A stretch of 64,000 nt of DNA from Asterias rubens (taxonomy: Eukaryota). The stretch spans positions 16,864,001 to 16,928,000 of the forward strand of contig NC_047065.1 in the NCBI RefSeq assembly GCF_902459465.1. Reading direction: 5' to 3'. Below, piece after piece: positions 14,941 to 55,289 of the stretch. The notes beneath the pieces were generated by a model. It saw only the letters and a list, made by a program, of their open reading frames with translations, did no database searches and had not been told where the DNA came from. Made by a program: the position numbers and the translations under genes. Within the stretch, counting starts at the first letter, position 1. Each line of letters opens with the position of its first letter.

Positions 14941-15504
14941 TTACTGAGAACTAAGGCGACCATCATCACCGGTGTACAGGCAGAATAATGGAGTGTTGGT
15001 GACGGGGACAGGGAGCTCACAGACTGCGTAGTTTTCCCTGTAGCAAGGTTGATCATCCCATTTACCGCCACGGTCACCCCACATTGCTGCACAATACAAA
15101 TAGATGGAATCCGGTTGTCCTGCTGCCCAGTTCTTGTAAGACCCGCTTGTATTACTCAGCAGACCATCCCAATGTCCCTTCGCTTTGATTAAACCAATCC
15201 AGAGATTTGGAGTTGTGGTGTCCTCAATCTTTTGCAGAAAGAATTCCCAAATAAACTCCTGTGCCGATTGTGAGTTTGGGATACCAAGCGTTGCTCCATA
15301 CTCGGTACAAAGACTCTTTGCGTTGTTCCAAGTCATCTTCTCCGTTATGATGAAGTAACATGACGCTCCGTCTTTGCGCCAATCAGGAGGGCAGTTTCCA
15401 TGCTGGCAGTTCTTTTGCTGGCAGATACCTGCCAGAATACTACCACAACCGAGAATCAGAAGCAGACTTGAAACTTTAAAGATATTCATTTTTGGATTCA
15501 GCAA
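14941..15504 (-). CDS. Secreted C-type lectin paralogue, QPD motif (ORF 187 aa; the homologous start MNIFK is 5 codons in)
   Basis: Same signal peptide and CTLD motifs as 7906 (CPPDW, WNNAKSLC, LWIG, NWAAGQPD, GKWDDQPC, AVCE). Confidence 0.92.
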   Translation of the reverse strand: MLNPKMNIFKVSSLLLILGCGSILAGICQQKNCQHGNCPPDWRKDGASCYFIITEKMTWNNAKSLCTEYGATLGIPNSQSAQEFIWEFFLQKIEDTTTPNLWIGLIKAKGHWDGLLSNTSGSYKNWAAGQPDSIYLYCAAMWGDRGGKWDDQPCYRENYAVCELPVPVTNTPLFCLYTGDDGRLSSQ

Positions 15505-17266: not shown

Positions 17267-18447
17267 GTTTTCACTCACTGGTCATCATGACAGACGGCAT
17301 GCTGGGCCGGTGTCAAATGCAATTGAGTCTGTCATGCAATACTGTCCGCTCCGGACACTTTTGCGTATTTAATCGTGTCCGGGGCTATGCAAAAACCGTC
17401 CGGTGGATGTACATGACTCCATGTATGTGCGCGCGTAAGCGAGCATGCATGCACTAAACACACGTATATGCAGCATGAATATTCAGGTATTTTATGAATA
17501 CCAAACTGCCGAACATTTCCCATGTCATTCATGCCATGCACTTAGCAGCTTGTAGAAAAATGGCCAACGTGTTCCGTCGGCGACCAAGGGCGTTTAATTT
17601 ACTGCAAGGACGATTTTGCACGGGGGCGGACACAAATGCATATGCAAAAGTGTCCGGGCGGACATAATTGCATTATGCAGCGGACAGTCCTCCGAATAGT
17701 ATTGCATAGAGGACATAATTGCATGCGACACGGGCTCCAAGCCGCCCCAAGCCTCTAATCACTATACCATTCCTGCTGACGTGGTATATTTTCTTCCTTT
17801 TATTGCATGACCTATGTACAAGGTCCGTAAAGTTGTGTAGTCGAAAATGTGTTACTACAGTGGCGGATTGTGTTAGTTTATGAAGTAAAAGGAAAACCAC
17901 ATAAAAATTATTTTGAGAGACATTTGTTTGAATCATTATACATGTATTCTATTGTTTTGTAAACAATAATTCATCTCAAAATAAACCCTTTTACAACCCA
18001 AAGCTCCAATCCGAAGGTAATGTCACCACAATTTATGATTCGTCCTCCAGAAAGAATAGGTTCACTTTATGTGTAGTGTTTCACATTATTATATATAATA
18101 TCAAAGTCTCATATAGCGCACGTATCTACCAAACAAGGTACTCAAGGGGCCCGAGTATAAACAAACTTATATGACCCGACTTTGATGTCAAGAGAGGCTC
18201 ACCCCAACGATGGCTTGTTGCTAACTGCACCACAACGGTCAACCTTTACCAGACACTATGTAATAAAGCCCCAGCATTTCTAATACCTTTGCGCTTAATA
18301 TAAGCGCTTTGATACACCCATAGATGCAATATAAAAACTTTTTTTAAGATTATTATATTAATATTTTCACACTAACACATGAATGAGCCATACAACATCT
18401 GGAGACATTTTTGAAATAATAAACTGAAATTAAAAACGAACAATTTA

Positions 18448-21400
18448 TCATCTTCTCTGCATTTTGCGTTCCATTTTCTTTTGTTTCTTATCGTCGACCT
18501 CCGCAGCAGGAGCAAAAAACCACGGAGCAAGAATAGTTGTCCAGAGAAGGTAAAAAGCTCGGCCTGGAATAACCAGCCAGAGGAGCCAAAAGTAGTCTGT
18601 CATGATACTTAGCACTTGGATGACTGCCGTAACGAGTAGAATATCTTTCACATGCCTGTATGTAAATGTATAGTTTAAAAAAAAAAGTTGTCAATCACCT
18701 ACATGTAATCATTGTAAGTGCACCACTTAAAATTATCTCAGCACACTGAACACACTGACAATTAAAAGCTTTTAAAACATTAAACAGTTGAACAATAAAA
18801 AAGTAAAACATTATATTAAAAACACGACTACCATAATTACAACAAAACAAATACCATATAATTAAGGGCAGTGGACACTATTGGTAATTACTCAAAATAA
18901 TTATTAAAAACTAACATAAGACCTTTCTTGATGACAAGTGATGGGGAGGGGTTGATGGTATAACAAATTTTGAGAAACGGCACCCTCTGAAGTTCCATAG
19001 TTTTCAAGAAAGAAGAAATTTTCCACGAATTTGATTTTGAGACCTCAAAATCCATCATCTAAACGCACACAACTTCCTGTGACAACTTCCTATGACAAGG
19101 GTGTTTTTTCATTCATTATTATCTCGCAAGTTCGATAACCGACTGAGCTCTAGTTTTCACAGGTTTGTTACTTTATGCATCTTTATGTTGAGATACACCA
19201 ACTGTGAAGGCTAGATTTTGACAATTACCAATAGTGTCCAGTGTCTTTAAATGATTCTATAGCTGTGGGCTGCATGAGTATTTGATGGAAGATCATCCCA
19301 TACCATGGGAGCAACACCACAAAAAGCATGATTACCATATCATTGGAACAACAATGGAATATTGGAACAACAATCCTTTAAACTCTAAAAAATAGCTTCA
19401 ATATTGTAGAATCAACATTGAGACAAACTAAACACCACAATAAACAGTTAACTTGGGAACGGCTTTAGAACAGAAGTATTTATGTCCTTCAAAACGAGGT
19501 CTCTTTTACATGCATTACACAACACCTGGGACCGATGGCTTTACGTCCCATCCTAAGGATGAGGCAATAGCGGTTAAGGGACTTGCACAAGGACATAAGT
19601 ATCATGACCCAGACTCGAACCCACACTCTGCTGATCAGAACACCGTAACTTAATTGGTGCACTAAAGATCGCTTGGCTATAGACCTTTCTTTTGTTGATA
19701 AACAAACCGCCTTGGTTGGCATGGTCGGCCGAATGTTAGTAAATCACTAAATCGTAAAAACAGATGTTTTAACAAAATTCAACATTTTCTGCAAACTTTC
19801 AGTTAAATAAAATACCTCTCATAATTAGTTGTTTTGTTTTAAACAAAATCAACAAATTTGGTTACATTGTTACCAAAAATAGCGATCTTTTCTTGATTGC
19901 ACTTAAGGCTTTCCATAGTTTTCCAATCTGGGTTGGCAAAAACTCGGGCTGTGACGTTGCAAAAGAAAGGTCTATTACCTACAAATCTAGGTCTGAAGTG
20001 CGTTTTAGCGGCCATAACCAAAACTGTTTCAGTTGAACTTGCCAATGGTTGATCACTGGCCATAGGCTGAAACAGCTATTGGTTACAGCCGTGAAAACAC
20101 ACCCCAGGGGTTGGTTAGGAGAAAGGTAAAGATTGAAACTCACTCAGCCATGCCATTCTCCATGTTTAGGTCTACACCTCCGTCCACTACTGAGCCTGTT
20201 GATGAGTATTTAGCCTTGGCCATGAAGGCCATAAACTGGTAACAGCCGAAGTACACAGAAGATGCAAATATCAACAACAGCTGCGGTAAGGGAAAACAAA
20301 AAAATGTAAACAACAAACAAGACATTATAAGACAGCATTGTTAAAACTTTTCAGGTAGTTTGGAAAGAATCGAGATGTCTAAAACTTTAATCCATTAAAA
20401 CAGCAGCCCAACATTTTTTAGGCCGGCACCCAGATGGCACTATGTGTGTTCTCAACTGCTTTGACCTCTCCTACTGAATACTGTGTCAGATTTTACATGA
20501 CAAAAACACCAACATTCCGAAATGAGAGTTGCAAATTTTGGGACTCTGATCAAATACAAGAAGAAAACATTAAGACGACAATAACTTTGGAGAGCTGAAG
20601 GTAGGAATTTATATTCCTCTTAAAACAGTCTAGATTGTAGGATGGAGGTAAACACGCACCAGGCATGAAGTTCTAAAAAGATTCAGTAGGCCCTACCTAC
20701 TAAAGCTGTGGATGGCTCTTTGTACTACATTTAGCAAAGTAAGCTGTATGGGTCAGAACAAGAGTAGAAAGCCTGGTTTCATGCTCACACACCCCAATAT
20801 AGGAGGAACAAGGTCCGATTCTAAGGAGCAATTCCAAAAATCATTCAACTCTTTGAACGAGAAGTTGAGGGTAATTTTACAGTGGCTTTATGATTATTAT
20901 CACAGAATTACCACAAATAAAACTGTTTGTCAAAATTATACTCACCCAGTGTAGCCACGTAAAGGATTCTAGCCACCATAGAAGACGAACGACGACATAC
21001 GCAGCACTTGCCCCAAACATGATGTTACGGTAATAGATCAGCGTTTGTTTGTTCTCCTCTGCAATCTGTTTCTGACCTTTCGTTGCTACTTTACCCTTAG
21101 GCTGTAACGAGAAAGAAAAAAACAAAAACAAAAAAAATTTAAAAAAAGAGAGAGAAAAAGTTTGTCACTTTACTTGGTTAAAGGCAGTGGACACTATTGG
21201 TAATTACTCAAAATAATTATTGGCATAAAACCTTACAGTTACTTGGAAACGAGTAATGGGGAGAGACTGATGGTATAAAACATTGTGAGAAACAGCTCCC
21301 TCTGAAGTGACCTAGTTTTGGAGAAAGAAGTAATTTTTCACGAATTTGATTTTGAGACCTCAAGTTTAGAACTTGAGGTCTCGAAATCAAGCATCACAAA

Positions 21401-25480: not shown

Positions 25481-27918
25481 AAGGCGACCAAATTGCACAC
25501 ATGATCAAGACTAATCTTTTTAATGCAATGGATTATAAGCCGCTGTGGCGCAGTCTGCTACCAATCAGACCAAAAACACCAGGGCGAACCCCTTCTCTTT
25601 GCGATGGGTGCACTGGGTTCTTTAAATTCCGCTTTATTTTTTTTCTTACAAGCCTCAGAATATTTTTGCTAGTATTGTTGTAAATGATGTTTTGAACCTA
25701 TACGTATATGAAACCGGTTTATAAAATAATTTTTAAAAAAGTCTATAGCAAACACAACACCGAAGAAGAAACTGTTACAAAAAGTAAGGTTTTCTTTGTA
25801 CAAAATTACTTTAATTGTTATTGATCTCACTAACCTTGTTAGAAGTTCCTTACAGCTGCAATGCATCAAACAATCTAAATTTAAATTGTTTTAACCCGCA
25901 ATAATATTTGCTTGAATCAATTAATAACCAATCAATTTACTGCTTGTTAAAGGCAGTTGACAGAATTGGTAATTACTCAAAATAATTATTAGCATAAAAC
26001 CTTACTTGGTAACGAGTAATGGAGAGAGGTTGGTAGTATAAAACATTGTGAGAAACAGCTCTCTCTCTCTCTCTGAAGTGGAGTACTTTTCTGGGAAGAA
26101 GTACTTTTCCACGGATTTGATTTTGTGACCTCAGGTTTAGAATTTGAGGTCTCAAAGTGACAAGGGCGTTTTTTTATTCATTATATCGCAACTTCAACCA
26201 CCAATTGGGCCCAAATTGTCACAGGTTTGTTATTTTATGCATATGTTGAGATACACCGAGTGAGAAGACTCGTCTTTGACAATATTACCAACAATGTCCA
26301 GTGTCTTTAAAAAAAGTATTTTAGTGTTGTTTTTCTAACAGAATGATTCAAAGTTCATCAAAGTATTTATTAGAAATGTTGTGCTGAAATAACATTTTAA
26401 AATTTGGAGTTAAAAAACTTCGCTCAAGTTTGAAGTAAAAGAAAATTTGACTATGAAAAATAAAGCAGTTATTAACCCTCACCCTCCAAAATCTTCCCAA
26501 ATACCTTTAAAGCTGCCAGATTGTGTCGGATTGAGGACTATTGACCCAAATCAGAATTGATTATGGCTGGCCCAGGAAAACTAACCTCATCCAAGTCCAA
26601 ACAAGTTGGTGTTTGGTGTAAACAAAGACATTAGGTCAATTGCTCAACTGTGTTCTACAAATAAAATATGCTGGTATTGTGAAGAAAATTTTAAGTCTTG
26701 CTTTGAATGCACCGAGTTACAATCCTTCAAGTAGTTCAAAAATGAGAAACTTGGTTTTACAGTTTGTTAAGGAAAAATTAGATCATGTAAAACAAAGAGA
26801 CTAACACTTTCAAATGCATAAAGTTATCCGATTAAAGCCATTGGACACTTGCGGTAAACAGTATTGTCCAAGGCCCACACTTCGTGTATCACAACTTATA
26901 TATAAAATAACAAAGGTGTGGAAATTTTGGCTCAATCGGTCATCGGAGTCGGGAGAAAATAACGGGAAAACCCACCCTTGTCTACCCACGTTTCATGATA
27001 TGTGTTTAAAATAAATCCGTAATTCTCGCTATCGAGAATTATTATTGTTTTAATGTTTGTTCAAAAAGTAAAGCATTTCATGGAATAATATTTCAAGATA
27101 AGTCTTTCACTATTACCTTCTGTAAACCCTGTGAATTATTTGTAAATCTGTGAACTTTTCATTTTTTGTCTGTACCGAAAGTGTATAATGATGGCTTTAA
27201 GGTGAAATAAAGAGTTAAGGTTCATAGTTATTATCACGTTCCAATTATATCCAATTCCAGACATGTACTTATTGAATCACCAGGATTTGTGAGAAACAAA
27301 TTAAGGAATTTGAGTTCTGATTTTGCTCTATTTTTTTCCCCTAGAAGCAGCAAAATACTTCAGAGTGCATAAAAAGTCAAAGAAAACTTTCCAGAAACAC
27401 AAAACAACCGCCTAAATCCCACAATAATACAATCACATTCCACAAGGAATCCAAACCAAGGAACTATTGAACAATTATTTACAAGTGATGAACAAAAAAA
27501 GAGTTAAGGAAAAACAAAAAAGGGGACCTATGTACAATGAAGTATTTTTAATACAAGGCATGAGGCCAGTTGCTGGCCACTTTAAAAAAAGCTATACATG
27601 ATTCAGGAATTGAATCTCTCCTCGTGAACAACCATTTGGTTTACAATCACCTTCACATCCACTATCTAACATGGGATATATTTGTTAATGGAAAGCAATA
27701 CAAGTGACCAAAGATTTGCATCTTTAAGTGAACTTTTTTATAAGGTGCAATCGTTGTGGGAGATTTGGAATTTTATCACAGACATTGTGCATAGTTTGAT
27801 CCTTGCCGCGCAAGAGGAGGACAAATTAAGGCAGAAACTGCTGTTCAAAATAACCACTTGGTGAATTTACTGCTGCATGGTTTTAGGACAAGCATGGCAG
27901 ACTGGCCCTACACTTTAG

Positions 27919-28290
27919 AAGGCCGGTTCATACTCGCTGCGTACTCACTGCATATGCAGCGCGCGGACCCGTTTTTGAAAGTCTGCAGTGCGTAAAAGGA
28001 AGCGCAGTGCGTAATCGTATTTCGCAAATGCATATGAACTTTTCAAAATGAAAATAAGGTCGTACACACTAATCCGATGCGTAGTCGAACGAATTGAAAT
28101 ATTTTAACATTTTGTCGGATGTGTAAGCGCAATTTGAGTGAATAATGTTCGTGAATAACATCATTCGTTTCCGCGTGCGGATGCAAACTTAATGCGTATT
28201 TATTTTTTATTTTGATTAAGTATGAACGCTAAATCAAATTTCGAATTGTCTGGTGCATGCACGCAGTCGCAGCGAGTATGAACCAGCCTT
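27919..28290. mobile_element. MITE-like element with ~23-bp TIRs (AAGGCCGGTTCATACTCGCTGCG), Harbinger-like
   Basis: Inverted termini with one mismatch; no clear TSD seen. Confidence 0.55.
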
Positions 28291-28788
28291 GGTGGAACAG
28301 CAGTTCGGGCTGCTGAACTTACTAGATCCATTTGTGAAGAATAATGTTTTTCATTCTACACTTGAATAAAGAGATCTGTAGCATACTTTCTCAAGATCAG
28401 GGTTTGACCTTTACAATTTCAATAGACCACCAATTTGTTCACTCGTCCATATTTTAATTTGGGTTTCAACAAAGAAGAATTGACCGAAGCGGGACTTGAA
28501 CCATTGACCTTCGGATTTGCGTACCAGTGCTCCATCAACTGAGCCATCCAGCCCTTTGTTGGTGGTCTCCCTATTTTATAAAAACTAAAGACCATTTATA
28601 ACGCAGAACTGCCCAGTTTGACCATGTGCTATTGGTGCTCAGTTGTTTAAAAACATTGTATCTGCAAACCAGGGAGAGTGCTGATGGTTCTCTGGAAGAT
28701 GCAACAGCGGTTCTACAGTAATAAGGGGTTTGGGACCAGTCTCAGGTCGGTGCTTGATTTGATTGTCAGCAGAGGAAAGTGGAAATGT

Positions 28789-43900: not shown

Positions 43901-46900
43901 TGACTGGCATTCGCTGGCCAACACGAAATGTGTTCCTAAACAATGAAGTTTATCAAAATAAAGTCACGACTTTTAGACAAACTAATAATCGTGTAGTCAA
44001 ACCAAAGTACAGTACAAAATGTGTACAAATTACTTTACAAAGCATTTGACGTGAGGTTTTTGAAAGGGAAACAAATATCTGGCTAAATAAATCTACTTTT
44101 AAGTTAATACATAATCAACGTTTCTTTTTAAAACGAGGCATCTTGACAGTCAACCAAAACCACAGCAACAGGGCACAATCTCTGGATCATTATACCTAAC
44201 GTTTAATACACTACTGGGTACCAGTTGTTGTGTAGTACCAGTTCATCTCAACTGTCAAAAGAATACAATACCCAATTGTTACGCAAATAACAGTTGACAT
44301 GAACTGCATAAACAGTTCAGACAGGTACCACCGATTTTAAGTAACAATATATCCTACATAAATATTACATTAAAAGTCAATACAATCCATAGAATCTTTA
44401 ATTTGAGGTAACAACAAGAAAAACTTATCTCTTGTAAAAATTCCATGAGTGGAAAAACAATTCAGTGCCAAAATTTCAAAATGTCAACCAGCTTTATAAC
44501 TTTGTTGGGTGCCAAAGTTCAAATGCGCGTGAGAATTGCACAATCTATTGTAAAAAAAACAGACAACAACTTTCTTACAGCCAAAACGAAAGAGGCATAA
44601 TTTTATTGCAAAATATTGGTAAATTAAGGCATACCTGGTCAGAAAAAAAGAAGTAAGTGGTTTACCTTCTTAGTTTGTTTTGCAAAAAATCTTGTGCAAA
44701 ACATGTATTACTCGATCCCATACAAATTATCTCCAATACCTTATATTGGATCCTCCCCAAATTAGAACCACAAAACAAACATACACCAAGTCCTCCAATT
44801 TTGGCTTGTGAAATGCTAATAATATTATTGTTTTTTAAAATCCTATTATCAAAATCATTGTCTGTACGCACAACAAAATATTTTAAGCTTGCCCTAAATG
44901 TAAGTATGAGTTGTAGTATACATAGTGTCCATACGTTATCGGGAGGAATGCAAAATTAAACAGGCAGTAACTCAAGGTTAGCCCCAAGGCTTTTTCAGGT
45001 TTTCCAGGGGCTTTTTAGCGTTAACTTTGAGCCCTCGAATTACCGCTGGTTTCCTTCTGCATTTCTCCCACAAATATTTTTTAAATACTGTGTTATTGAA
45101 GACAATGCACAAGTACTGCGTAAAAGAACTAAAAAATATATACAGTAAGTAATCTTCAAACCAAATTTTTAAATGATTACAATAAATAAAATGTGATAAA
45201 ACATAAATAAATAGAGACAAACGGGAGAATATATTGAGAGGATTTCTTACCGTCGCTGAGTTTCTTGACAGTCCAGACAGCGTTGGGATTACCTGGCAGC
45301 TCTGACACAGCCATTTCTGACACCTGGATTTCAAACGTCATCAAGAAATTAGTATCAAACAACAATAAACAAGATTTGATAACAGTTGGGTTTGAAGATG
45401 TTATCATTGCCAGGGTTCTCTCGAGGAGTTTTAAAAACTGGGACGTTATGCACCAAATATTTGTTATGCTTAGCCAAATTGAAACAAGGTCTTTGGAATG
45501 TTGTTCATCTTGGTTTTGAAAGCCCTACTTTGCAATCTGGAGTATTCTTATTGGTTATCTCTGGATTTCAAAACAATCGTCATCAATGAGTCAATATAAA
45601 ACAAAAATGAACAAGAGTTCGCCGAAGGATTTTTTTTATAAACAGTGAACCTAAGGTTTAGGATGTTTGGCCCAAGCCAGTAAAATGAAACAAGGTCTTC
45701 GGACTTTTTTCTACTTGGTGTTTATCTTGGTTTTAAAGTCCTAATGTGCCATCTGGAGCATTCTCCCTTGATTTTTTTTTTAATGCAAGTTCTTTTAGGC
45801 TGCAACGGCTGAAACTTGCAAGAATCAGCACGCAATTCACAGGGCAACTCTCGTACAGTTCCAGTGCAAGTCAAACTTGGATCAGATTATTGAGTGAAGA
45901 AAAGTATTCGGTTATAATCAGCGGCATTCATACGAAGCGCGAATAGGTAATCATCATCTCCATAGTTTGACTGCACTTGAAGTAGGGATGAAACTGGTTA
46001 TCAGCTAAAATCCATAAAGATAACAATGTTGCCACTGGAAATTGGCAAAGCAATAAATTTGCTTTGCAGTATTTTCTGCTTAACAGCTTTATGAAATTGG
46101 GCCCTGGTTGTATGCTTACTTGGATGAGTTCAGTGACCTTTGGTAAGTTAAGGGTTAACTATTCATGACCTCTCACATCTAAACCATAGATTGATTTCAG
46201 TGACCTATACACCTCTCTTAATATTTATGCATGAGGTACGTCACAATGCTAACTCAAAACAAGGCGATGGGCGCAGCCACTGCAAGTGATGGGGAACGTG
46301 CACCCATAGCCTCATTTTGGGTAAGAATTATGACTTCATGCATAAAAACTAAGAGAGGCGTATGGTAAGTAAAGGGGTTAACTATTCATGACCTCTCACC
46401 TCTAGACCATGACGGAGAACTCGAAGGGACGATCGGGGCCCTCTCCCTGAAGCAACGTACAGCTGTGGTGTATCTTCATTGGCTAAATCGGCAATCTGCT
46501 CATCAGGAAGGTCAAGCATAAACAAAAGAAAAAACATGAGCACAAAAATGTAAAACCTGTTTATTATCCCTTAAACAGTTGCAAAGTAAATACCTGATGC
46601 GCAAGAATCTCGTTTTAACAAGATTCCATTAACAAGATTCCAGTGCAAGTCATTCTTGGATCAGATTATTGAGTGAAGAAAAGTATTCGTTATAATCAGC
46701 GACATTCATACGAAGCGCGAATAGGTAATCATCATCTCCAAAGATTGACTGCACTTTAAGTAGGGAACGATGTGGGCACTAACTACGCAGAGAAAAACCT
46801 TTCAATGCAAACCTTCACAATGGCAGGACTTGGATTCAAATACCAGGTTAACTACTCTAGTAGTATGCCTGCGGATTAACTTTGTTCTTTTTTTATGTAG

Positions 46901-49551
46901 GTGAAAAACCTAAATAATAATATTCTTCATCTCGATTCAACTATGACATCTATTAAAAACTTAAAATAAAGCAGTTGAAGTTTCACCATGATTCAGGCAT
47001 GATATTGGAAAAAGTGGGCATATTTTGTTGAGTAGATGGGCTAACTTGACAAATGGTGAAGACTTTTTAAGCCTGATTAATAAAATAAAAAAAATCAGAT
47101 TTATCCAAGGCAAAAACTGTCTGAAAACAGTCTTAAGTAGGAAGAAAATCACAAGTACCGGTACTCTTACCTGGCAGCTCATGATTGGAGATAAGCTTTC
47201 CATCTGATCAATCTCCACCAGGTTCTTGAGGGAGCGAGGAGCAAAGAAGAAAGTGTCTCCTTCCTCCAGGGGCATGGCACTACTGAACTCCGGTTCATCG
47301 TCGTCATCCCCGAGATGGGCAATCTGGTAGAGGTAGCTGCAAGACGACAACAAGAGAAAGGGAGGATAAGATTTCTAGATTGGTAAAGGTTGCTGGTTCG
47401 AATCCAACCCAAGTAAAATGCCTGTGTATTTTGTTTTTCCACAGAACACGAGGAAAGTACTAAGTATACAGTGCTTACACACATTTAAAATAAGGCCTGG
47501 GCCCAATTTCAGTGAGCTGCTAAGCAAAAAAATTTGCTTAGCATGAAATTGTTGCTTTGATAAAAACAGGATTACCAAACGAATTTCCACATGATTTCAG
47601 GATTTATCAAATAATAGCTGAACACCAGTAATAAGCGAAATGCAAGAGATTGAAACTTGGTTGGTAATCCTGTTGTTTTTTTTTCAAGGAAGAAATTTCA
47701 TGCTAAGCAAATTTTCGTGCTTAGCAGCTCTATGAAATTGGGCCCTGGTTAAAAGACGTATTGTGCTTCAGTGCAGTTCAATCTTGGATCAGAACATTAA
47801 GTGAAGAAAGTAATTTGAGTATAATCAATGGCTTTTCATACGAAGCGCGAATGGTGTGTCATCATTTCCAAAGATTCACTGCACTTCATTAGAGGTACCC
47901 ATTGGGTGCCCTTTACCCAGGAGAAAATGCCTTGGTGCCCTTTTCTTTGGTGCCCTTGCCATTTCAAAAACGAAGCATACAGGCCTGCCCTTACCAAATA
48001 ATTTAATACAGGACACTCCTTGGGTTAATTACTAAAATAACGACAATATTTAAACAACTCTGAACTCACTGGTTCCCGAATTCAGCAGCCAAAAACAGGA
48101 AGCCAGTTTTAAGGACGTTCATGCTGGTGGCGATGGGGACCGTGTCAAAGTACTTCATACGGACTTCGGTGACCATGTCCTCGTCTGTCTCAAGGGTTAT
48201 CTTGAAGATGTCTCCCTGCTCCGTCTGAGCCAGGAAGAAGAACATCGACTGTAGAGAAAGAGATTGAAAGGTTTGTGGTAATTCATTGATTATAAGTATA
48301 ATGAAACCTATGAAGATCGTTCACATTTGCATTGAGTACTAATATTTCTTAAACTTTCCAAGAAAGAACAAATTAAAATCGATACCAGTCAATGCAGTTC
48401 AACTCAAGATCAGATAATTATGTGAAGAAAGTTATTTGAGTATAATCAATGGCTTTTCATACGAAGCGCGAATAATTTATCATCATTTCAAAAGTTTGAC
48501 TGCATGTGACTAGATCATCTGATTGACAGAACATCATTTGTTCATGGTCGGATTTGAATTTCCCATAATCTATTCAACTTCCTCGAGCGACAACACCAAA
48601 TTCTGGAACTAATTACGAGTAACCTTGTTGTCTTTCTTTTGTAAAGGCATGGTTTCATTATGGACAACAAAATTTTCACACGAAATTGATTACTCAAAGT
48701 TCTGTGGCAGGGTGGGAACGAAACTTGATTTAAAAATACTGACACGAGACACGATTGGTAATCAGGTTTTTCCCCATGCACAAGCTACTGTATCCGGCCG
48801 ATACGAACCAAGTTTATACAAGCAAATTCATTTGTTTCCATACCTTTGTTTTATGAGTTGCACTGCATACGAAGATCATCCCCCTCTCTGGATCGTCAAG
48901 ATCATTCTGTTACAGAAAGGAAAACAATTAAATAAATACAGAAAACTATTCAAATGGTTTAGAATTGTCATTGGATGATTTACAAGCATGAAGTTTATAG
49001 TATGAAACCCAAATATAATTCAGTTTCCTCCTGAGGAAAATCAGAGCAAATTGATCGAAACGTCAATCTGTGAAATGTCAATGTTACAGCACTGTTTCTG
49101 TTCAAAATAATCACAACTCAGTTTGAGAGTGTTCCTGTCCAATGGTGTTACCATAAACTTTAGTAGAAAATATTTATAAAACCTTGCCCCAATCTCAAAT
49201 TTCTTTCCTTATTGGCATTAAGAAATTTTCTTTTTAAAGACTTTTAGAGAATGTTTGCAGTTCAACCTAGGATCAGATTATTGAGTGAAGAAAAGTATTC
49301 GGTTATAATCAGCGACATTCATACGAAGCGCGAATAGGTAATCATCATCTTCATAGATAGACTGCAGTTGATATTAATGCATTTGAACGATCCCTCTGCT
49401 CAACTAGTCTGCCCCCATCTGAGGGGCATTGCACTTACCCTTCGTCTGGGGATAGGCATTCTGATGTCCGGTTGGTCACCCAGATTCTTGTAGGTAATAT
49501 AATTCTCAGAGCATATCAGCACACCACTAGGACCATCACTGCCTCCAGGTA

Positions 49552-49586
<35 letters not shown>

Positions 49587-52500
49587 TAATAATTTAGGAG
49601 GCTAATTATCATTATTCACAGCTGAGAAGCCGAATTGTGAAGGATGCAGCTACAACTCATTTGAGCTGCAGGCATGCAGGGGCACCTTCGGCAGTCAGCC
49701 ACATTTACCAATATACGACCATGGAGCACAGCCAGAGATCCAAAGCATTTCATTTTTTTTTTTCAAGAGGAAGGAAAACTGGAAGGCCCGATAACCAACA
49801 CACAACTCTACTCACATACATGTATGACCTTTGAACAAAGACAACAGAGGCGAGAGGGAAGCACTTTACGCACAAGCCAGCCATGCCACCCCAATAATTG
49901 AATAGAACATAGAAATTAACAGATGGAGGCTTCAGGTAGAAGGAAGATTTCCAGAAGGAAGATTTCCAACCTGTGTGAGTTTGGATCAGTACTTTAAGAA
50001 TGTTAATCACGATAATCAGCTGAAACACGGATTAAAGTACAATCATCATTTCCAAACTGATGAGAGTTTCTGAACCAATAATTGACGTCAGCCCATCACC
50101 ATGGTAAAAATAAACAGATAACATATTATTAACATTCTTCCAGGTCATTTTCGGCAAATAAAAGCAGTCAATTTAAACAGCGTGTTACTCAGGCATGATA
50201 TTTGACCCTTGATAAAAAGGAGAAACATTTTCTTGAGTACAAGTGCTGACCTACATATACACATGGAATAGGCTTTTAAAGGGAAGGCACACGTTTGGTA
50301 ATTACTCAAAACAAATATTAACTTAAAAACTGACTTGGTAACTAGCATTGGCGAGCTGATGATAGTATAAAAGATTGTGGGAAACGACTCCCTCTGAAGT
50401 AACGTAGTTTTTGAGAAAGAGGTGATTGCTCACTTAAATAATAAAAGACTTCTTGCTAGAAGTCTTTTATTCCCATCTGAAAGCACACAAATTCGTCCAA
50501 CAAGGGTGCTTTTCTTTCATCATTTTCTCCCAACTCCAATGACCAATTGAGTTCAAATTTTCACAGGTTTGTTATTTTATGCTTCTAAATGTTGAGATAC
50601 AATAAGTGAGAACACTGGTCTTTGACAATTACCAATAGTGTACCTTCCCTTTAAAGACTTTTCAGGCTATTTATTCAACAAATTTCCAAGGGCGAAACAA
50701 TTATGAAATCAGAAGAATATCATGCCAGGTGGCGATTTCTAAAAGAGCTAAGAATTATATTAGGTGCTAATCAATCTTTACATGTGATGACACAATACAA
50801 ATCACTATGGCAATTTTTTATTTATTTTTTTATTTATTTTTTATTTATGCAAGTTGCCAGATACACAAGGCCTGAAGGCCACTTCAAGGTGTGGGCTACA
50901 AATTTTTTCAGAGGCCGTTGCCACCTACTCCTAGGGCTGTAACAGGGTTACCCCTTTTACCGTCCATACGGATGTAGGCTTGGGTATCATCAATCCGAAG
51001 CCTGGTGTTTTGTGAAATAGAGCCCTGGTTATTCATGCTGGTCCTCTACTTTGGAATAATCTGCCTCTTAATATCCGTAACATCTTTTCCTAAGTTCAAA
51101 GAGGCCCTCAAAACACACTTTTTCACAGCTGCTTTTTATTAATTTTGGAGTTTCTTCCTTGCGCCATGAGCATCACTTGTGGTGGATACCGGCGCACTAA
51201 AAGTGTTCTTATTATTGTTATTAAATAATGTGAAATTGAAAGCCAAATAATACTGACCAGCAATGAGGAAATTGCCATGTTCCTCGAGTGCTTCACTGTA
51301 CTTCCTGACAACGTGGTTAAGCCCCAGGTCTAGCTCGTAGTATGTCAGCATCTGCTGGGTAGCTGCCGCTGCTTCACCGGTTGGATCCGAATCGCCCTCC
51401 TGAGTTATCAAGTTTTAAGAAAAATGCACAATAGGGTCAGATTGCAGGGAGTAATGCCACCTGGCTAAAAGCAGAAAATTGAGGAGGTCTTCAGTTATTC
51501 CAGTCGTATTAAACCATTTGTCATAAGACAGTCCCCCCAAAAAAATGGCACATAAACTGACACAAAGTGGTTAAAACCCTAACCCCTTGAAGATTATAGC
51601 TGGACACTAGCCCAATACCCAACATAATCCAACAGCATAGGGTAAAGATTTTGGAGAATACATGATAGTAAGGGTAAAGGAAAGTGATGCTTTTTAAAGT
51701 GCAGTTGGTTGGATCAGAAAAAAATAGTGAAGAAAATATCTTGTTAAAATCACAGAACATTCATACGAAGCGCGAATAGTTTTTCATCATTTCCAAAGAT
51801 GTGCTGCACTGGTAAAATTATAATCTCAACCTCTTCCGTCTCACTTCCTCCAACCTCCTCTATAGCCTCCTAGAGTCTTTGATATGTGCTCTATAAATTT
51901 TCCAGGGGCTAGAGTCATTGTTAACAAAACAGTCTGAAACTATAGGACCCAAACTTAGGAGGTTTTAGGAGGCGTACGTTGAAATTATGACATTTCCGCA
52001 TTTTGGTAAACCCTGTGGTTTACGTTCACAGACCTTTTTTAGGAACAGTGTTCTAGGAACTAGAAAAGTAGAATAAAGAGCAATATTTCTTAATACAATG
52101 TGGACAAAATAATGGCTGATTTTCTTCACCAGGCTGACCTAAAAAGTCTGAATTCAGATAAAAGTCTGAAAGTCTGATCCCTGCATCTGCACAGCACACA
52201 AAGCTTTAAATCTCACTCACCTCATAATCGATCTCGAGACAGGCAAACATGGGATTCTCAAAGCCGACGTCCACGCCCACAATGTGATAACAGAAGGTGC
52301 TGGACTTGTGTGCCTCCAGCGGGGACGAGATGGTCAGCCTGGCCTGAGAGTCACGGTTGAGGATGTAGACCAGCTTCTGCTTCTCAATGGCTGCGATCAT
52401 GACGGCGCGACCCTTGGGGTCAACGGCCATGAGCTGACCGGGTACGATGCGGCGGCAACCGCTCTTCCCAAACGTCTCTTGGTGAACCTTCAATATCAAA

Positions 52501-55289
52501 TGAATATTTTGTTATTGTGGGTCGAAATCAGGGCCCAATTTCATGGCTCTGCTAACCGTAAACACAGAATCGGCGCTTACGGAAGCAGGGAATTCTGTGC
52601 TTACGGCAAGCATATGTCATGGGTTAGCGGCGAATTTGGGCTTCTGCACGTGCGTACTTCACGTTACTAGGTATTCTACGCTTACAAGGCTAGCGCAGAA
52701 ATTCGGCGCTTGCATGTAAGTGGGGAATCGCGATCGTAAGCGCAGAATTCGGCGGTAAGCAGAGCTATGAAATTGGGCCCAGGTGGTCTCACAAAAGATG
52801 AAAGTAAAAACATTTATCTGCAAATAGACATTTGCCATAATCATGGAAACTTGACGAACTTATACTTATGAAAACCCTAAGCGGCTTCGCCTTCTCGAGG
52901 CTTTGGCCAAGACTCTCCTGGTTCCTTCAAAATACCGTACTCTGTGGTAACTTATAGCCAAATGTTTGGACTTGGACAAGATTAGGTTCTTAGGTACAAT
53001 ATGTTTGTTTTTCAGAGAGAGTGGGAAGACCAAAGTCAACCAAACATGGTAGTCTTGGTTCAATCTTTCTTTATTCTACAAAATGTACTTTTGATCTCAA
53101 AAGAAATCAATATTTAAAACAAAAGTATTGTTTTGAGTGCAGTTTTTTTGGATCAGAAAAAAATTGTGAAGAAAATATTTTGTAAAAATCACAGAATATT
53201 CATACGAAGCGCGAATAGTTTTTCATCATTTCCAAAGATATGCTGCACTGGTAAAATTATTGAGTACGAAATCAAGAATCTCGACCTCTCCACTTGCTGA
53301 TCACTACTCTAACCATCCGCACCACACAACGCTTGAAATCCTAGTCACCTCATAATCGCTGAAGTGCGCAAATGTGTTTCCTTCCGGCGTTAAACCAATG
53401 TTTGTGGGACAAAAGTGGTCCCCAAAATGTTTGATCAAGCAAAAACTTACACGATTTATATTAAGTAGGATTTGAAACTTTGCATGGTGGAAGTAAGATA
53501 TAGAAAAGTTTGCCGGAGTCTATCGCATTCCATGCGAATGTGGTAAGGTTTATGTCGGGGAAACCGGGCGTAACCTTCCCACTAGACTTAAGGAACACCG
53601 AGCACACGGAAGGAGGGGGGACTTCGATAAATCCGCCATCGTCAAGCATTCCCACATCACTGACCACCAAGTGAACTGGGAAGCAGCAGAAATCATCGCT
53701 CCAATCCAGGCGTGGCACCCTAGACGCATCAGAGAGGCCATAGAGATCCACAAGCATGACACCGTACCCCAAGACATCGGCTTCCACATCAGCGACATCT
53801 GGCTCCCCCTTCTCCCGACCAATGGATCTTCTATATCCACGGTCACCCCCTAGGCCCCAACCATTAGACTGCTTTGGGTCATCTATACCCTCAGTCACCT
53901 AGGCCCCACACCCTCACTATCCCCTGTGCTTGTTCCTACTGACACGGTTCAGTGAGCACACACCACCCTAGGCTCCCTAGGCTCCACCCTAGGCTCCACA
54001 ACAGGTTCACCACGCATCATCGAGTTCACTTCCCGCCTCTATTTCCCGCCTTCATGCATCACCGCTGATCCACCGCCCAGTACTTAAGCAGCATGCAGCA
54101 TCAGAGTCCAGCATTCTCCAGAAGACGATCAGAGCATACTGATCGAAACGTCGAGTTAATCCAACGGTTCTTTTCAGAACCACCCCAACTCATTGAGAGA
54201 TTGTTATTACATGGTGTTACCGCAAACTTTTCTATACGATTTATATTGCAATGTGAAAGTTATTTCTTCTCTGAGATTGCCTGGAACTGGTTGCCAGTAA
54301 CTTGCCTAGTGTGACATGCCTCTCGGAGTCATTCAATACTTACCCTGTCAAAAGTGTTCTTGGCCGGGTTGTACTCCAGGATGCAAATACGCCCCGAATC
54401 GGTACCAACCACGATATAATCTGCCAAAAACAATAACATTAAAGATGTGAAGGATGACAAAAGGTCATTTGAATCACAGGGATTTCGTCCAGCAATTTGG
54501 CATAACAAACAATATAGACTGAACTTATTTTATGCACACATGATATTTTAGTAACAATTGATATCTTTTGTGTAGCATTTCGCTTGGCTATACAAGGGAC
54601 ATTGCTCACTGCATCTTTTGGTACAATTGAACTAGAATCAACTACAATACCCAGGACCAGGAGTGAGAGTCATTGCTGACAAAAAAAAGTTTGAAACTGG
54701 GATACAAATTTTATGAGGTTTATGTGGTTTAGATTTCACTGAGCTTTTAGTTCCAAACAGTGTCCACAGCAATAGAGAGATAGATCAAAGAGCAGGAGTT
54801 TTTGAATTGCTGCCTTTCTTCACCAGACCGACATAAAGTCTGAATTTAAATAAAAATAAATGGCAGGCCTGAAATTGAGAGGACAAGTCCATTTTCATCT
54901 TGCAAAAGTCTATGGGAAACATTTCGAAGGCAGACCAAGGGCCAAGACCAGCAGGGTAACAGAGGCCATAGCCACCGTGGTCTCTGTTTATTTTCAGGCT
55001 TGCAATGCATCAACGTAACTTCAGCAAGTTAAACTAGCCTTTCCAGTCTTCCCAAGGATTTACCTTTGCTCCCTCCAGTAAGCTTGAAGGCCATCAACGA
55101 ACGGATGATCCCAAAGATCTCGTACGTAAGCACGGCATGGAGCTTGCCGGTGTTGGGATCCAGCTTAAGAAGCTCAAGGGCCTTCCCTCGGGCCACAACG
55201 ATCTCCTGCTGCTTCGTCCCGGCGAAGTTGCCATGGATAGCTTGCACGACTCCCGTGGCCCTCTGGAGGGTCAGTGAATACAGAAACAT
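28789..55289 (-). CDS. SF3B3: Splicing factor 3B subunit 3 (SAP130), complete, 26 coding exons, 1216 aa
   Basis: Exons: 55064-55289, 54344-54420, 52221-52487, 51258-51399, 49439-49551, 48844-48906, 48070-48248, 47171-47336, 46400-46495, 45251-45323, 41083-41234, 40483-40587, 40096-40146, 39573-39728, 37248-37388, 34924-35046, 34567-34721, 33754-33928, 32882-33087, 32426-32582, 31989-32114, 31356-31568, 30527-30769, 29763-29867, 29048-29143, 28789-28833. All GT-AG and phase-compatible, 3651 nt in total. [12 protein letters not shown]...[14 protein letters not shown] matches SF3B3. An acceptor AG immediately before the start implies a non-coding exon 1. Confidence 0.98.
35605..37115. mobile_element. 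Non-autonomous DNA transposon with 14-bp TIRs and an apparent 5-bp TSD (hAT5-like)
   Basis: CAGGGAACGATTTC at 35605 versus GAAATCGTTCACTG ending at 37115; GATGT on both flanks; TTGCAT(A/C)GCAA subterminal repeats at both ends. Confidence 0.55.
37874..38403. mobile_element. hAT-type MITE, 530 bp
   Basis: TIRs TAGTGCTGGGCGAAT / ATTCGCCCAGGCCTA; perfect 8-bp TSD GCATGTAC (37866-37873 and 38404-38411); internal ATATCCG/CGGATAT repeats. Confidence 0.88.
38825..39126 (+). mobile_element. tRNA-derived SINE (MetaSINE-like core); related copy at about 63555-63870; other tRNA-head SINE fragments near 28470-28570 (-) and 34300-34370 (+)
   Basis: A-box TGGCCGAGTGG and B-box GGTTC(A/G)AATCC, followed by the GAGCAAGA(T/C)ACTT..CTCT(T/C)CACC(C/T)AGGGGT..ATGGGTACC core. 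The 63.6-kb copy ends in an (ATT)n tail. Confidence 0.7.
39127..39312. other. Assembly gap (N run) in SF3B3 intron 14
   Basis: 186 N bases. Confidence 1.
45878..45961 (-). ncRNA. Box C/D snoRNA paralogue 1 (SF3B3 intron 9)
   Basis: Box C ATGATGA (45957-45951), guide TATTCGCGCTTCGT, D' ATGA, C'-like CTGATTA, TTTCTTCAC, box D CTGA (45885-45882); flanking inverted stem. Confidence 0.85.
46657..46739 (-). ncRNA. Box C/D snoRNA paralogue 2 (SF3B3 intron 8)
   Basis: Box C 46735-46729, box D 46664-46661, same guide and D'; near-identical to paralogue 1. Confidence 0.85.
47499..47747. mobile_element. MITE family C (GGGCCCAATTTCA...TGAAATTGGGCCC), Harbinger-like; relatives at about 11305-11552, 29280-29508 and 52531-52782, with half copies near 30810-30965 and 46030-46105
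   Basis: Inverted termini and recurrent GCTTAAGCA/GCTTAC internal motifs in several dispersed copies. Confidence 0.7.
47785..47869 (-). ncRNA. Box C/D snoRNA paralogue 3 (SF3B3 intron 7)
   Basis: Box C 47865-47859, box D 47792-47789, guide ATTCGCGCTTCGT plus ATGA, TTTCTTCAC, external stem. Confidence 0.85.
48406..48490 (-). ncRNA. Box C/D snoRNA paralogue 4 (SF3B3 intron 6)
   Basis: Box C 48486-48480, box D 48413-48410, same guide. Confidence 0.85.
49269..49352 (-). ncRNA. Box C/D snoRNA paralogue 5 (SF3B3 intron 5)
   Basis: Box C 49348-49342, box D 49276-49273; near-identical to paralogues 1 and 2. Confidence 0.85.
49982..50053 (-). ncRNA. Box C/D snoRNA, SNORD32/SNORD51 (yeast snR39/snR59)-like guide (SF3B3 intron 4)
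   Basis: Box C ATGATGA 50049-50043; guide TCCGTGTTTCAG followed by D' CTGA; C'-like GTGATTA; box D 49989-49986; perfect 8-bp flanking stem AGTTTGGA/TCCAAACT. The guide pairs with 28S UUGAAACACGGA. Confidence 0.8.
51710..51794 (-). ncRNA. Box C/D snoRNA paralogue 6 (SF3B3 intron 3)
   Basis: Box C 51790-51784, box D 51717-51714, same guide and D', TTTCTTCAC. Confidence 0.85.
53149..53233 (-). ncRNA. Box C/D snoRNA paralogue 7 (SF3B3 intron 2)
   Basis: Box C 53229-53223, box D 53156-53153; near-identical to paralogue 6. Confidence 0.85.
53515..54160 (+). mobile_element. 5'-truncated Penelope-like retroelement: GIY-YIG endonuclease C-terminus plus 3' tail
   Basis: In-frame 53515-53853: [28 protein letters not shown]...SAIVKH...HQVNWE...RRIREAIEI. 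The tail holds a hammerhead-like motif at 54116-54155. Confidence 0.88.

What the first reader, a model, noticed from the sequence alone, without database searches (positions are those of the whole stretch)
45878..53233. One box C/D snoRNA in each of eight consecutive SF3B3 introns; seven are paralogues of one guide RNA
Seen: introns 2, 3, 5, 6, 7, 8 and 9 each hold one ~80-nt minus-strand element with box C (ATGATGA), invariant ATTCGCGCTTCGT-ATGA(D'), a C'-like TGATT, TTTCTTCAC and box D (CTGA). Intron 4 holds a different C/D RNA. All are sense to SF3B3, never two per intron, and boxes and guides are conserved while spacers drift. Established: animal intronic snoRNAs follow a one-per-intron rule, and human SF3B3 hosts SNORD111/111B, which guide a different 28S site. 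Inference: a lineage-specific seven-copy amplification of a guide RNA under purifying selection, tying a core U2 snRNP gene to rRNA modification.
Basis: partly seen in the sequence, partly recalled or inferred. Interest (0 to 1): 0.85.

Follow-up and report, generated by a model that had tools for sequence, protein, structure and literature searches.

The report
Sea-star SF3B3 intron snoRNA cluster
Eight consecutive introns of a sea star's SF3B3 splicing-factor gene each carry one small box C/D guide RNA; seven are copies of one echinoderm-wide guide predicted to methylate a ribosomal RNA adenosine not listed as modified in human, chicken, yeast or Arabidopsis. It is a real and well-conserved cluster, but of a familiar kind.

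Summary
The 17-mer ATTCGCGCTTCGTATGA occurs exactly 7 times, all on the minus strand (0.13 expected). Each copy lies in a 75-77-nt box C...box D unit in SF3B3 introns 2, 3, 5, 6, 7, 8 and 9. Intron 4 holds a SNORD126-like unit.

The window comes from an Asterias-like sea star. The eight units differ from their Asterias amurensis orthologues at 5 of 600 mature positions, against 8.6% in the 35-nt flanks and about 5-13% in intron. That indicates purifying selection.

The 5' guide pairs over 13 bp with LSU rRNA ACGAAGCGCGGGU and selects the second A of GAAG. This A lies 13 nt 3' of the U36/snR47 site and 3 nt 5' of plant Gm2237. The conserved UUUCUUCAC pairs with GUGAAGAAA 4 nt upstream, but it sits 8-9 nt from box D, so I read it as accessory base-pairing rather than a second guide.

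The guide family is echinoderm-wide, always in SF3B3 and always sense:
- Asterias: 7 copies
- Patiria: 4, plus one decayed copy
- Acanthaster: 2
- Sea cucumber: 4-5
- S. purpuratus: 1

Only the copy number is lineage-specific. SF3B3 is already a known snoRNA host in vertebrates and, with paralogues, in Drosophila. No Rfam family reaches threshold. Expression and methylation are untested. The scan separately noted paralogous intronic snoRNAs in two other genes of this genome.

The parts
53145..53237 (-). Family-X box C/D snoRNA, intron 2 (box C starts at 53229, box D ends at 53153; guide plus D' at 53200-53216; accessory 9-mer at 53166-53174)
   Evidence: (104.7 bits). The orthologue in Asterias amurensis (L125:7340-7432) differs at 2 of 77 positions.
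51706..51798 (-). Family-X snoRNA, intron 3 (box C 51790, box D end 51714; guide 51761-51777; 9-mer 51727-51735)
   Evidence: (101 bits). Orthologue: 0 of 77 differences.
49979..50057 (-). SNORD126-like box C/D snoRNA, intron 4. The D' guide UCCGUGUUUCAG-CUGA is complementary to LSU UGAAACACGGA, and there is an internal helix GUACUUUAA/UUAAAGUAC.
   Evidence: RF01168: 40.2 bits, gathering score 55, E 8e-6; the guide is identical to the consensus. Target motif found in fetched rDNA. Orthologue: 0 of 64 differences. Fold.
49265..49356 (-). Family-X snoRNA, intron 5 (box C 49348, box D end 49273; guide 49319-49335; 9-mer 49285-49293). Its terminal stem is weaker than in the other copies.
   Evidence: (100.4 bits). 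It was missed by the generic stem filter. Orthologue: 0 of 76 differences in the mature RNA.
48402..48494 (-). Family-X snoRNA, intron 6 (box C 48486, box D end 48410; guide 48457-48473; 9-mer 48422-48430)
   Evidence: flank duplex -28.2 kcal/mol, reached by 0 of 300 shuffles; z -3.8.
47781..47873 (-). Family-X snoRNA, intron 7 (box C 47865, box D end 47789; guide 47836-47852; 9-mer 47801-47809). It shares its 5' spacer signature (CACAC) with the intron-7 copies of Patiria and Acanthaster.
46653..46743 (-). Family-X snoRNA, intron 8 (box C 46735, box D end 46661; guide 46706-46722; 9-mer 46673-46681)
45874..45965 (-). Family-X snoRNA, intron 9 (box C 45957, box D end 45882; guide 45928-45944; 9-mer 45894-45902)
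   Evidence: flank duplex -26.7, reached by 0 of 300 shuffles; 106.5 bits; z -3.3.
45850..53262 (-). External stems: the roughly 32 nt on either side of each of the eight units are complementary to each other (GUGCAG...UUUGGA / UCCAA...CUGCAC in the seven paralogues).
   Evidence: duplex energies of -13 to -28 kcal/mol, reached by 0-5 of 300 shuffles. In the MFE folds these flanks close on the C/D boxes in all seven paralogues.
45204..55289 (-). Host: SF3B3 exons 1-10. ATG at 55289; exon 3 about 52221-52490; exon 4 about 51259-51402; exon 5 about 49439-49555; exon 6 about 48844-48909; exon 7 48070-48248; exon 8 47171-47336; exon 9 about 46397-46498; exon 10 about 45204-45344. The gene continues down to about 29045.
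   Evidence: tblastn. (a spliced RNA contig fixes exons 7 and 8).

Best explanation
These are eight functional intron-encoded box C/D snoRNA genes, one per intron, released from the SF3B3 pre-mRNA.

Seven are paralogues of an echinoderm guide family that always lives in SF3B3. Its single active guide (AUUCGCGCUUCGU, followed by a D' box AUGA) pairs over 13 bp with LSU rRNA 5'-ACGAAGCGCGGGU. By the fifth-nucleotide rule it directs fibrillarin to 2'-O-methylate the second A of GAAG. By my count from the U36 site, that is yeast 25S A2233, Arabidopsis A2234 and human A3716 in the old numbering.

A second conserved element, UUUCUUCAC, lies in the otherwise unused 3' half of the RNA, 8-9 nt from box D. 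It pairs with GUGAAGAAA four nucleotides upstream on the rRNA and acts as accessory ('extra') base-pairing that stabilises the guide duplex. Long complementary flanks (external stems) bring boxes C and D together, because every unit lies 150-670 nt from its 3' splice site.

The eighth RNA is a SNORD126-type guide for the adenosine 3 nt 5' of the U18 site.

Shown here: the anatomy, the complementarity, the orthologue conservation, and the distribution across species. Inferred: processing to a stable RNA, the methylation itself, and the helper role of the 9-mer.
For: Anatomy:
- Boxes, guide and orientation are present in 7 of 7 copies.
- The terminal stem is paired in 94.9% of cells, with compensatory changes at 6 of 6 pairs across 26 distinct SF3B3-hosted units; 0 of 500 shuffles reach this.
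- External stems are significant in all eight units.

Selection:
- Paralogue similarity is confined to the mature RNA plus about 35 nt. The intron-5 copy is 99% identical to the intron-8 and intron-9 copies in the mature RNA, 57-68% in the flanks, and at random level beyond them.
- Orthologues in Asterias amurensis differ at 5 of 600 mature positions, against 49 of 568 in the flanks and 609 of 4767 in intron (Fisher p 1e-26).

Target:
- The motif GTGAAGAAATTCAANNAAGCGCGGGTAAACGG occurs in 120 or more metagenomic rDNA loci, inside Rfam LSU_rRNA_eukarya matches.
- NN is CG in 12 of these loci, which gives full pairing with the guide (11 Watson-Crick pairs and 2 G-U).
- In three such 13-15 kb loci the guide site is unique and the only perfect 9-mer site starts 13 nt upstream (a 4-nt gap). 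Shuffled 13-mers find a site in 5-9% of trials, and shuffled 9-mers find an adjacent site in 0.7%.

D' box: it reads CTGA at the same distance from the guide core in the intron-16 copies of Acanthaster and Patiria, and in the sea cucumber and sea urchin copies.

Precedent:
- Extra base-pairing placed in the second guide region of single-guide snoRNAs is documented (PMC3116282).
- Arabidopsis U36 binds the same two rRNA segments and methylates A2221 and G2237 (PMC8053127).

Copy number: bins of the read depth table that hold a snoRNA plus unique intron have depth 20-150, against 1e4-1e6 for the interspersed repeats nearby, so this is not a high-copy element.
Against: - There is no direct evidence of a stable ~80-nt RNA. 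The RNA-run contigs cover exons and a little intron but none of the seven units, and only two runs of unknown type hold the unit.
- The D' box is the non-canonical AUGA in all seven copies, and C' is degenerate (UGAUUAU or UGAUUUU).
- The predicted site is not among the sites listed for Arabidopsis or chicken in the tables I read, nor, from memory, for yeast or human.
- No Rfam family reaches its gathering score.
- Overall fold z-scores are weak for several units (-0.2 to -1.4), which is usual for C/D RNAs.
- A WC/GU-tolerant 13-mer match to rDNA is not very rare on its own (5-9% of shuffles).
Confidence: 0.72

Rival explanations
1. The RNAs are real methylation guides, but UUUCUUCAC is not a helper. 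It would be a fossil of a U36-type box-D guide that was separated from box D by an 8-9-nt insertion, or a site for something else, with no present role in rRNA binding.
For: The 9-mer ends exactly where a D box would have to begin to methylate the U36 site. Plant U36a carries both guides. The sea cucumber and sea urchin copies work, if they do, without the 9-mer.
Against: The 9-mer is invariant in all 7 window copies, 7 Asterias amurensis copies, 4 Patiria copies and 2 Acanthaster copies, while the sequence on both sides of it drifts. The decayed Patiria copy lost the guide and the 9-mer together. Its distance to box D varies (8, 9 or 10 nt) while its sequence does not.
Confidence: 0.18
2. The snoRNAs act mainly without methylating: for example as rRNA-folding chaperones across this part of LSU domain IV, as guides for another RNA (an snRNA or mRNA), or as structured elements that affect SF3B3 splicing.
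For: The bipartite 13 + 9 bp pairing is longer than methylation needs. The D' box is AUGA. The target is not a listed methylation site in the species tables I read. The host is a spliceosome gene.
Against: The guide abuts a D' box at fixed spacing in four echinoderm classes, and the box is the canonical CUGA in several copies. The best and unique rDNA match places an A at the fifth position. snRNAs could not be tested here.
Confidence: 0.08
3. They are non-functional repeats: a MITE-like element, retro-copied snoRNA pseudogenes, or sequence kept alike only by gene conversion.
For: The introns are full of interspersed repeats. Within-genome identity of 95-99% inside subfamilies could come from conversion. 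One Patiria copy is clearly decayed.
Against: Every hit, across ten SF3B3 loci, is on the sense strand. There is one unit per intron. Read depth is unique-like. Orthologous copies change about ten times more slowly than their flanks, which conversion inside one genome does not explain. The terminal stem shows compensatory changes. The pattern finds nothing in metagenome contigs.
Confidence: 0.02

Closest known systems
U36 / SNORD36 clan (Rfam CL00051), especially plant snoU36a (RF01302)
   Same: Box C/D RNA whose 5' element pairs with LSU ...AAGCGCGG... and whose 3' element pairs with ...GUGAAGAAAUUC... in the same rRNA stretch. It is the best sub-threshold Rfam match (29.8 bits). A SNORD36 match at gathering score lies in the brittle-star SF3B3 gene.
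   Different: The score is below gathering (29.8 against 45). The D' box lies 3 nt further 3', so an A rather than plant G2237 is selected. The 3' element is 8-9 nt from box D, so the U36 site itself cannot be methylated by the usual rule. There is no 18S guide. Vertebrate U36 is hosted in RPL7A, not SF3B3.
SNORD126 (RF01168), for the intron-4 unit
   Same: The 16-nt guide plus D' (UCCGUGUUUCAGCUGA) is identical. Size and box layout match. There is an internal helix between the region 5' of the guide and the region 5' of box D.
   Different: 40.2 bits against a gathering score of 55. It is hosted in SF3B3 in sea stars, sea urchins, a hemichordate and amphioxus. From memory, and unchecked, the human copy lies in another host gene.
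SNORD111/111B in vertebrate SF3B3, and the six C/D plus three H/ACA snoRNAs of Drosophila Sf3b3
   Same: Same host gene. Paralogous C/D guides sit in different introns (chicken introns 3 and 6). Most fly C/D copies cluster together as duplicates (PMC1636440, PMC2653536, PMC12309372).
   Different: The guide and target differ (SNORD111B guides 28S G3923). The match to the SNORD111 model is chance-level (20.5 bits, E 8.7). No Drosophila snoRNA family appeared among the matches at E up to 10.
Extra base-pairing snoRNAs (e.g. yeast snR75, snR47; human U16)
   Same: A conserved element that is not next to a D or D' box, lies in the second guide region of a single-guide snoRNA, and is complementary to rRNA right beside the methylation site (PMC3116282).
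   Different: This is a functional class, not a family. The stimulation of methylation has not been tested for these RNAs.

Membership tests
Box C/D snoRNA (class) | Box C (RUGAUGA) near the 5' end and box D (CUGA) near the 3' end, closed by a short terminal stem | tested here: met
   ATGATGA and CTGA are present in all eight units. The terminal stem is paired in 94.9% of cells, with compensatory changes at 6 of 6 pairs.
Box C/D snoRNA (class) | At least 10 nt antisense to rRNA, ending next to box D or D', with the target at the fifth paired nucleotide | tested here: met
   13 bp to LSU ACGAAGCGCGGGU directly upstream of AUGA/CUGA. The site is unique in three rDNA loci. The sea star's own 28S was not seen.
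Box C/D snoRNA (class) | Internal C' and D' boxes | tested here: met
   D' is AUGA (CUGA in relatives). C' is UGAUUAU or UGAUUUU, which is degenerate. The D'-C' spacer is 7-8 nt.
Box C/D snoRNA (class) | A stable 60-100-nt RNA bound by fibrillarin, NOP56, NOP58 and SNU13 | not testable with these tools
   Only assembled contigs of RNA runs were available, and they do not show the units.
Animal intronic snoRNA | Sense strand of a host intron, one per intron | tested here: met
   All covariance-model hits in ten SF3B3 loci are on the sense strand.
SNORD36 / snoU36a (CL00051) | Reaches the Rfam gathering score | tested here: not met
   snoU36a scores 29.8 and 29.5 bits against a gathering score of 45. 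SNORD36 gives no match in the window.
SNORD36 / snoU36a (CL00051) | A guide next to box D that selects the A of GUGAAG (yeast A2220 / human A3703) | tested here: not met
   The complementary 9-mer is present but lies 8-9 nt from box D, and no D-like box follows it.
SNORD126 (RF01168), intron-4 unit | Reaches the Rfam gathering score | tested here: not met
   40.2 bits against 55, E 8e-6.
SNORD126 (RF01168), intron-4 unit | Guide UCCGUGUUUCAG followed by CUGA | tested here: met
   Identical to the model consensus over 16 nt. The same guide is present in the Acanthaster, Patiria, Glandiceps and sea urchin SF3B3 copies; the amphioxus copy and some sea urchin copies carry a variant (...UUUCAC).
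SNORD111 (RF00611) | Rfam score; guide for 28S G3923 | tested here: not met
   20.5 bits, E 8.7, gathering score 46. The guide sequence is different.

The most novel reading that the evidence does not exclude
The asteroid RNAs may be a remodelled U36-type guide. The ancestral box-D guide would have been uncoupled from box D and kept only as a tether, while a D' box placed 3 nt further 3' than in plant U36a selects a different LSU adenosine in echinoderms. The copies with the weak AUGA D' box were then multiplied intron-to-intron, up to seven in Asterias-like stars, to make up in dosage what they lack in efficiency. In the same host gene, sea urchins instead multiplied the SNORD126-type guide (5 copies in S. 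purpuratus against 1 family-X copy). SF3B3 would then act as a nursery in which guide dosage is tuned by intron copy number.
Probability: 0.2. Interest if true: 0.55.

Novelty: new member of a known kind. Interest (0 to 1): 0.4.

Why it matters
It adds an apparently undescribed box C/D guide family that reaches no Rfam threshold, with a concrete and testable prediction. The prediction is a 2'-O-methyl adenosine in LSU domIV between the U36 and U46 sites, not listed for human, chicken, yeast or Arabidopsis. It also gives a clean natural series across echinoderm classes (1, 2, 4, 5 and 7 copies) for studying how intronic snoRNAs spread between introns of one host. In that series, two guide families in the same gene (family X and SNORD126-like) have expanded in different lineages. 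It does not change how snoRNAs or SF3B3 are understood.

Tried and rejected
- Rfam at gathering threshold finds none of the eight units. At E-value thresholds only sub-threshold C/D families appear.
- The snoRNA pattern has no match in metagenome contigs.
- RNA evidence: the contigs of four runs show exons and repeats but not the snoRNAs. This is uninformative for an ~80-nt non-polyadenylated RNA.
- Exon-sized protein fragments led only to 1-2 kb Logan contigs without snoRNAs.
- The weak model hit at 18398-18462 has no D box and was rejected. The hit at L131:7271 is exon 8 coding sequence.
- A box-D guide was considered and rejected. The 8-14 nt upstream of box D differ between subfamilies. 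Instead they co-vary with the nucleotides just after box C (AAAAA/TTTTT, ATTA/TAAT, ACAAA/TTTGT). The mean own run is 3.1 bp against 1.7 with swapped partners. This is suggestive, not rigorous.
- The Drosophila snoRNA papers (Huang 2005) and the nematode ceN30 paper were not held, so whether fly Sf3b3 guides share this target could not be checked.
- Guide/target co-variation at the NN positions (sea cucumber guide ...CAU against asteroid ...CGU) could not be tested without the echinoderm 28S sequences.
Full report
**Observation.** The region was read on the minus strand. The 17-mer ATTCGCGCTTCGTATGA occurs seven times in the 64-kb window. All copies are on the minus strand and none has a mismatch. 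The expectation is 0.13, and no shuffle reached seven.

Each copy lies in a unit of 75-77 nt that runs from ATGATGA to CTGA. The unit also holds a C'-like TGATT and an invariant TTTCTTCAC. A different C/D unit lies at 49979-50057.

The host is SF3B3 on the minus strand:
- The ATG is at 55289.
- The exons are about 98% identical to Asterias SF3B3 proteins.
- A spliced RNA contig fixes exons 7 and 8.

The units sit one each in introns 2-9. A crude generic C/D scan and a covariance model built from the seven copies find no second unit in these introns and none in the remaining SF3B3 introns of the window.

**Whose genome.** The window's SF3B3 is nearest to Asterias amurensis and A. rubens but identical to neither. 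Its introns are 88-97% identical to the A. amurensis locus. It is therefore an Asterias-like (forcipulatid) sea star.

**Are they real genes?** Four lines of evidence agree.

1. *Anatomy.* Boxes C and D are canonical. The six-base-pair terminal stem is paired in 94.9% of cells across 26 distinct SF3B3-hosted units from nine species. Compensatory changes occur at all six pairs, and no shuffle reaches this. The caveats are that the alignment was fitted to the model and that it mixes three families.
2. *External stems.* The ~32 nt flanking each unit are mutually complementary. Duplex energies are -13 to -28 kcal/mol, reached by 0-5 of 300 shuffles. In MFE folds these flanks close onto the C/D boxes in all seven paralogues. 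Every unit lies about 150-670 nt from its 3' splice site. From general knowledge of mammalian intronic snoRNAs, such stems substitute for the optimal short distance to the branch point. That step is inference.
3. *Paralogue similarity stops at the RNA.* The intron-5 copy is 99% identical to the intron-8 and intron-9 copies in the mature region. Identity falls to 57-68% in the 35-nt flanks and to random level (0.45-0.52 against 0.49) beyond them.
4. *Orthologues.* The eight units differ from their A. amurensis counterparts at 5 of 600 mature positions (0.8%). The 35-nt flanks differ at 8.6%. The surrounding intron differs at about 5% where it aligns cleanly and at 12.8% overall.

Gene conversion within one genome cannot produce the fourth result. 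This is purifying selection on each locus, or at least on the set.

Read depth over bins that hold a snoRNA plus unique intron is 20-150. The interspersed repeats in the same introns reach 1e4-1e6. A high-copy mobile element is therefore excluded.

**Target.** The guide upstream of D' is AUUCGCGCUUCGU. Its complement, together with the complement of UUUCUUCAC, suggested one stretch of LSU rRNA.
- The pattern GTGAAGAAATTCAANNAAGCGCGGGTAAACGG was found in at least 120 metagenomic rDNA loci.
- Three loci that I checked are complete rDNA units, with the motif inside Rfam LSU_rRNA_eukarya matches.
- NN is CG in 12 loci, which gives a 13-bp duplex of 11 Watson-Crick pairs and two G-U pairs.
- In three such 13-15 kb loci the guide has one site, and the 9-mer has one perfect site that starts 13 nt upstream, leaving a 4-nt gap.
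- Shuffled guides find some WC/GU site in 5-9% of trials. Shuffled 9-mers find an adjacent site in 0.7%.

The fifth nucleotide upstream of D' pairs with the second A of GAAG.

To place this A, I used Arabidopsis U36. It methylates A2221 (the A of GUGAAG) and G2237 with its two guides, 16 nt apart, each serving as extra pairing for the other (PMC8053127). The sea-star target is 13 nt 3' of the first site and 3 nt 5' of the second. By my own count that is Arabidopsis A2234, yeast A2233, human A3716 and chicken A3226.

The Arabidopsis table lists A2215, A2221, G2237 and A2257 in this stretch. The chicken table lists A3207, A3213, G3233 and A3249. Neither has the predicted site.

**The 9-mer.** UUUCUUCAC ends exactly where a D box would have to start to methylate the U36 site. 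Instead, 8-9 variable nucleotides follow before CUGA. That variable stretch tends to pair with the nucleotides just after box C.

Van Nues et al. describe conserved elements that are not adjacent to D or D', often lie in the second guide region of single-guide snoRNAs, and are complementary to rRNA beside the target. Such elements raise methylation up to five-fold (PMC3116282). The 9-mer fits that description. I rate this reading at about 55-60% on its own. The main alternative is a functionless relic of a U36-type guide.

**Relatives.** Whole SF3B3 genes with their introns were fetched for ten species. They were searched with the covariance model and with motifs. Introns were mapped by protein coordinates.

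| Species | Family X (guide ...UCGCGCUUC...) | SNORD126-like | Other |
|---|---|---|---|
| Asterias amurensis (sea star) | 7, in the same introns as the window | 1 (intron 4) | |
| Patiria (sea star) | 4 (introns 6, 7, 8, 16), plus one decayed copy that lost both guide and 9-mer | 2 | |
| Acanthaster (sea star) | 2 (intron 7 or 8, and intron 16) | 2 | |
| Apostichopus (sea cucumber) | 4, plus one with a diverged guide; no 9-mer | 0 | two identical C/D units of a further kind |
| S. purpuratus (sea urchin) | 1 (intron 15) | 5 | |
| L. variegatus (sea urchin) | none by motif | 3 | |
| Amphiura (brittle star) | none | 0 | two SNORD36-like units, one at Rfam gathering score |
| Antedon (crinoid) | none | 0 | |
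| Glandiceps (hemichordate) | none | 1 | |
| B. floridae (amphioxus) | none | 1 | |

- All hits are on the sense strand.
- D' reads CUGA in the intron-16 asteroid copies and in the sea cucumber and sea urchin copies, at the same spacing from the guide core. This confirms the box assignment.
- A tree of the short sequences groups the sea cucumber copies together. It places the CUGA intron-16 copies outside a clade of AUGA copies from the 5' introns of sea stars. This is weak but consistent with independent expansions.

The family is therefore old (at least Eleutherozoa) and tied to SF3B3. Only its copy number is lineage-specific.

**What is already known.**
- Human SNORD111B (28S Gm3923) lies in SF3B3 (PMC1636440).
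- Chicken has two copies, in introns 3 and 6 (PMC2653536).
- The SnoBIRD paper treats SF3B3 as a recurrent host. It reports six C/D and three H/ACA snoRNAs in fly Sf3b3, most of the C/D ones being duplicates of each other (PMC12309372).
- Multiple paralogues in introns of one host are ordinary. The chicken table lists many.
- The scan noted two more such sets in this genome, in LARP1 and RIF1 (unchecked).

Against this background, seven copies in consecutive introns of a protein-coding gene is at the high end, but it is not a new kind of thing.

**Rfam.** Nothing reaches gathering score. The seven copies score best against plant snoU36a (29.8 bits, gathering score 45) and nematode ceN30 (29.1, gathering score 65). 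The intron-4 unit scores 40.2 against SNORD126 (gathering score 55), with an identical guide. The sea cucumber copies match nothing significant.

**Limits.** No stable RNA and no methylation were shown. The sea star's own 28S was not seen, and snRNA targets were not tested. Human and yeast site numbers for the predicted A are my own count from the U36 site.

**Verdict.** The cluster is real and under selection. It is a new guide family of a well-known class, in a host gene already known to carry snoRNAs, with an interesting copy-number history. Interest 0.4.

Noticed in passing
window 54161-54205 (+): A histone 3' stem-loop match just at the Rfam gathering score (34.3 against 34). It lies in SF3B3 intron 2, antisense to the host, with no histone reading frame upstream. 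It sits in a stretch of about 770 nt (about 53462-54233) that did not align at the orthologous place of the Asterias amurensis locus, so it is probably part of an inserted repeat.
   Followed up: partly
window 52530-52790, 47530-47750, 46040-46110 (introns 2, 7, 9): A repeated element with GGGCCCAATTTCAT-type inverted ends. The copy in intron 2 forms a hairpin that gives a sub-threshold 'mir-785' match (52544-52613). Read depth over these bins is 1e3-1e6, so it is a high-copy MITE-like repeat.
   Followed up: partly
window 50250-50650 (intron 4): The highest-copy repeat in the stretch. Summed contig depth reaches 5-8 million in DNA-type runs, with many joints and loose ends.
   Followed up: no
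window 7163-7215 and 9666-9718 (-): Two near-identical short sequences (53 nt) with a C-box-like GTGATGA, CTGA and a 4-bp stem, 2.5 kb apart, downstream of SF3B3. They are probably parts of a duplicated segment rather than snoRNAs.
   Followed up: no
L127 (S. purpuratus) 8020, 9543, 10699, 11122, 14772; L134 (L. variegatus) 4190, 4826, 6498: Sea urchins have multiplied the SNORD126-like guide in SF3B3 introns (5 and 3 copies). They keep one or no copy of the family that sea stars multiplied.
   Followed up: partly
L128 (Amphiura) 20185-20255 and 25524-25594: Two SNORD36-like C/D units in brittle-star SF3B3 introns. One reaches the Rfam gathering score (30.8 against 30). Its 5' guide contains UUCUUCA next to CUGA.
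   Followed up: partly
L128 (Amphiura) 27528-28675: Eight head-to-tail 147-nt (143-nt step) matches to the last 49 residues of SF3B3. This is either a tandem duplication of the final coding exon or an assembly artefact.
   Followed up: no
L133 (Patiria) 5206-5291: A decayed family-X copy. The boxes, D' (ATGA), C' and the terminal and external stems are kept, but the rRNA guide and the 9-mer are both replaced.
   Followed up: partly
L130 (Apostichopus) 8042-8112 and 15106-15176: Two identical C/D units of a further, unidentified kind (guide region GAUAUUUCGGGUUUUAU) in two other SF3B3 introns of the sea cucumber.
   Followed up: no
Sea cucumber family-X copies, e.g. L130:2915-2998: In place of the 9-mer these copies carry CUGGAA upstream of box D. 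It is complementary to UUCCAG just 5' of the guide, giving an internal helix like the one in SNORD126-type RNAs.
   Followed up: no
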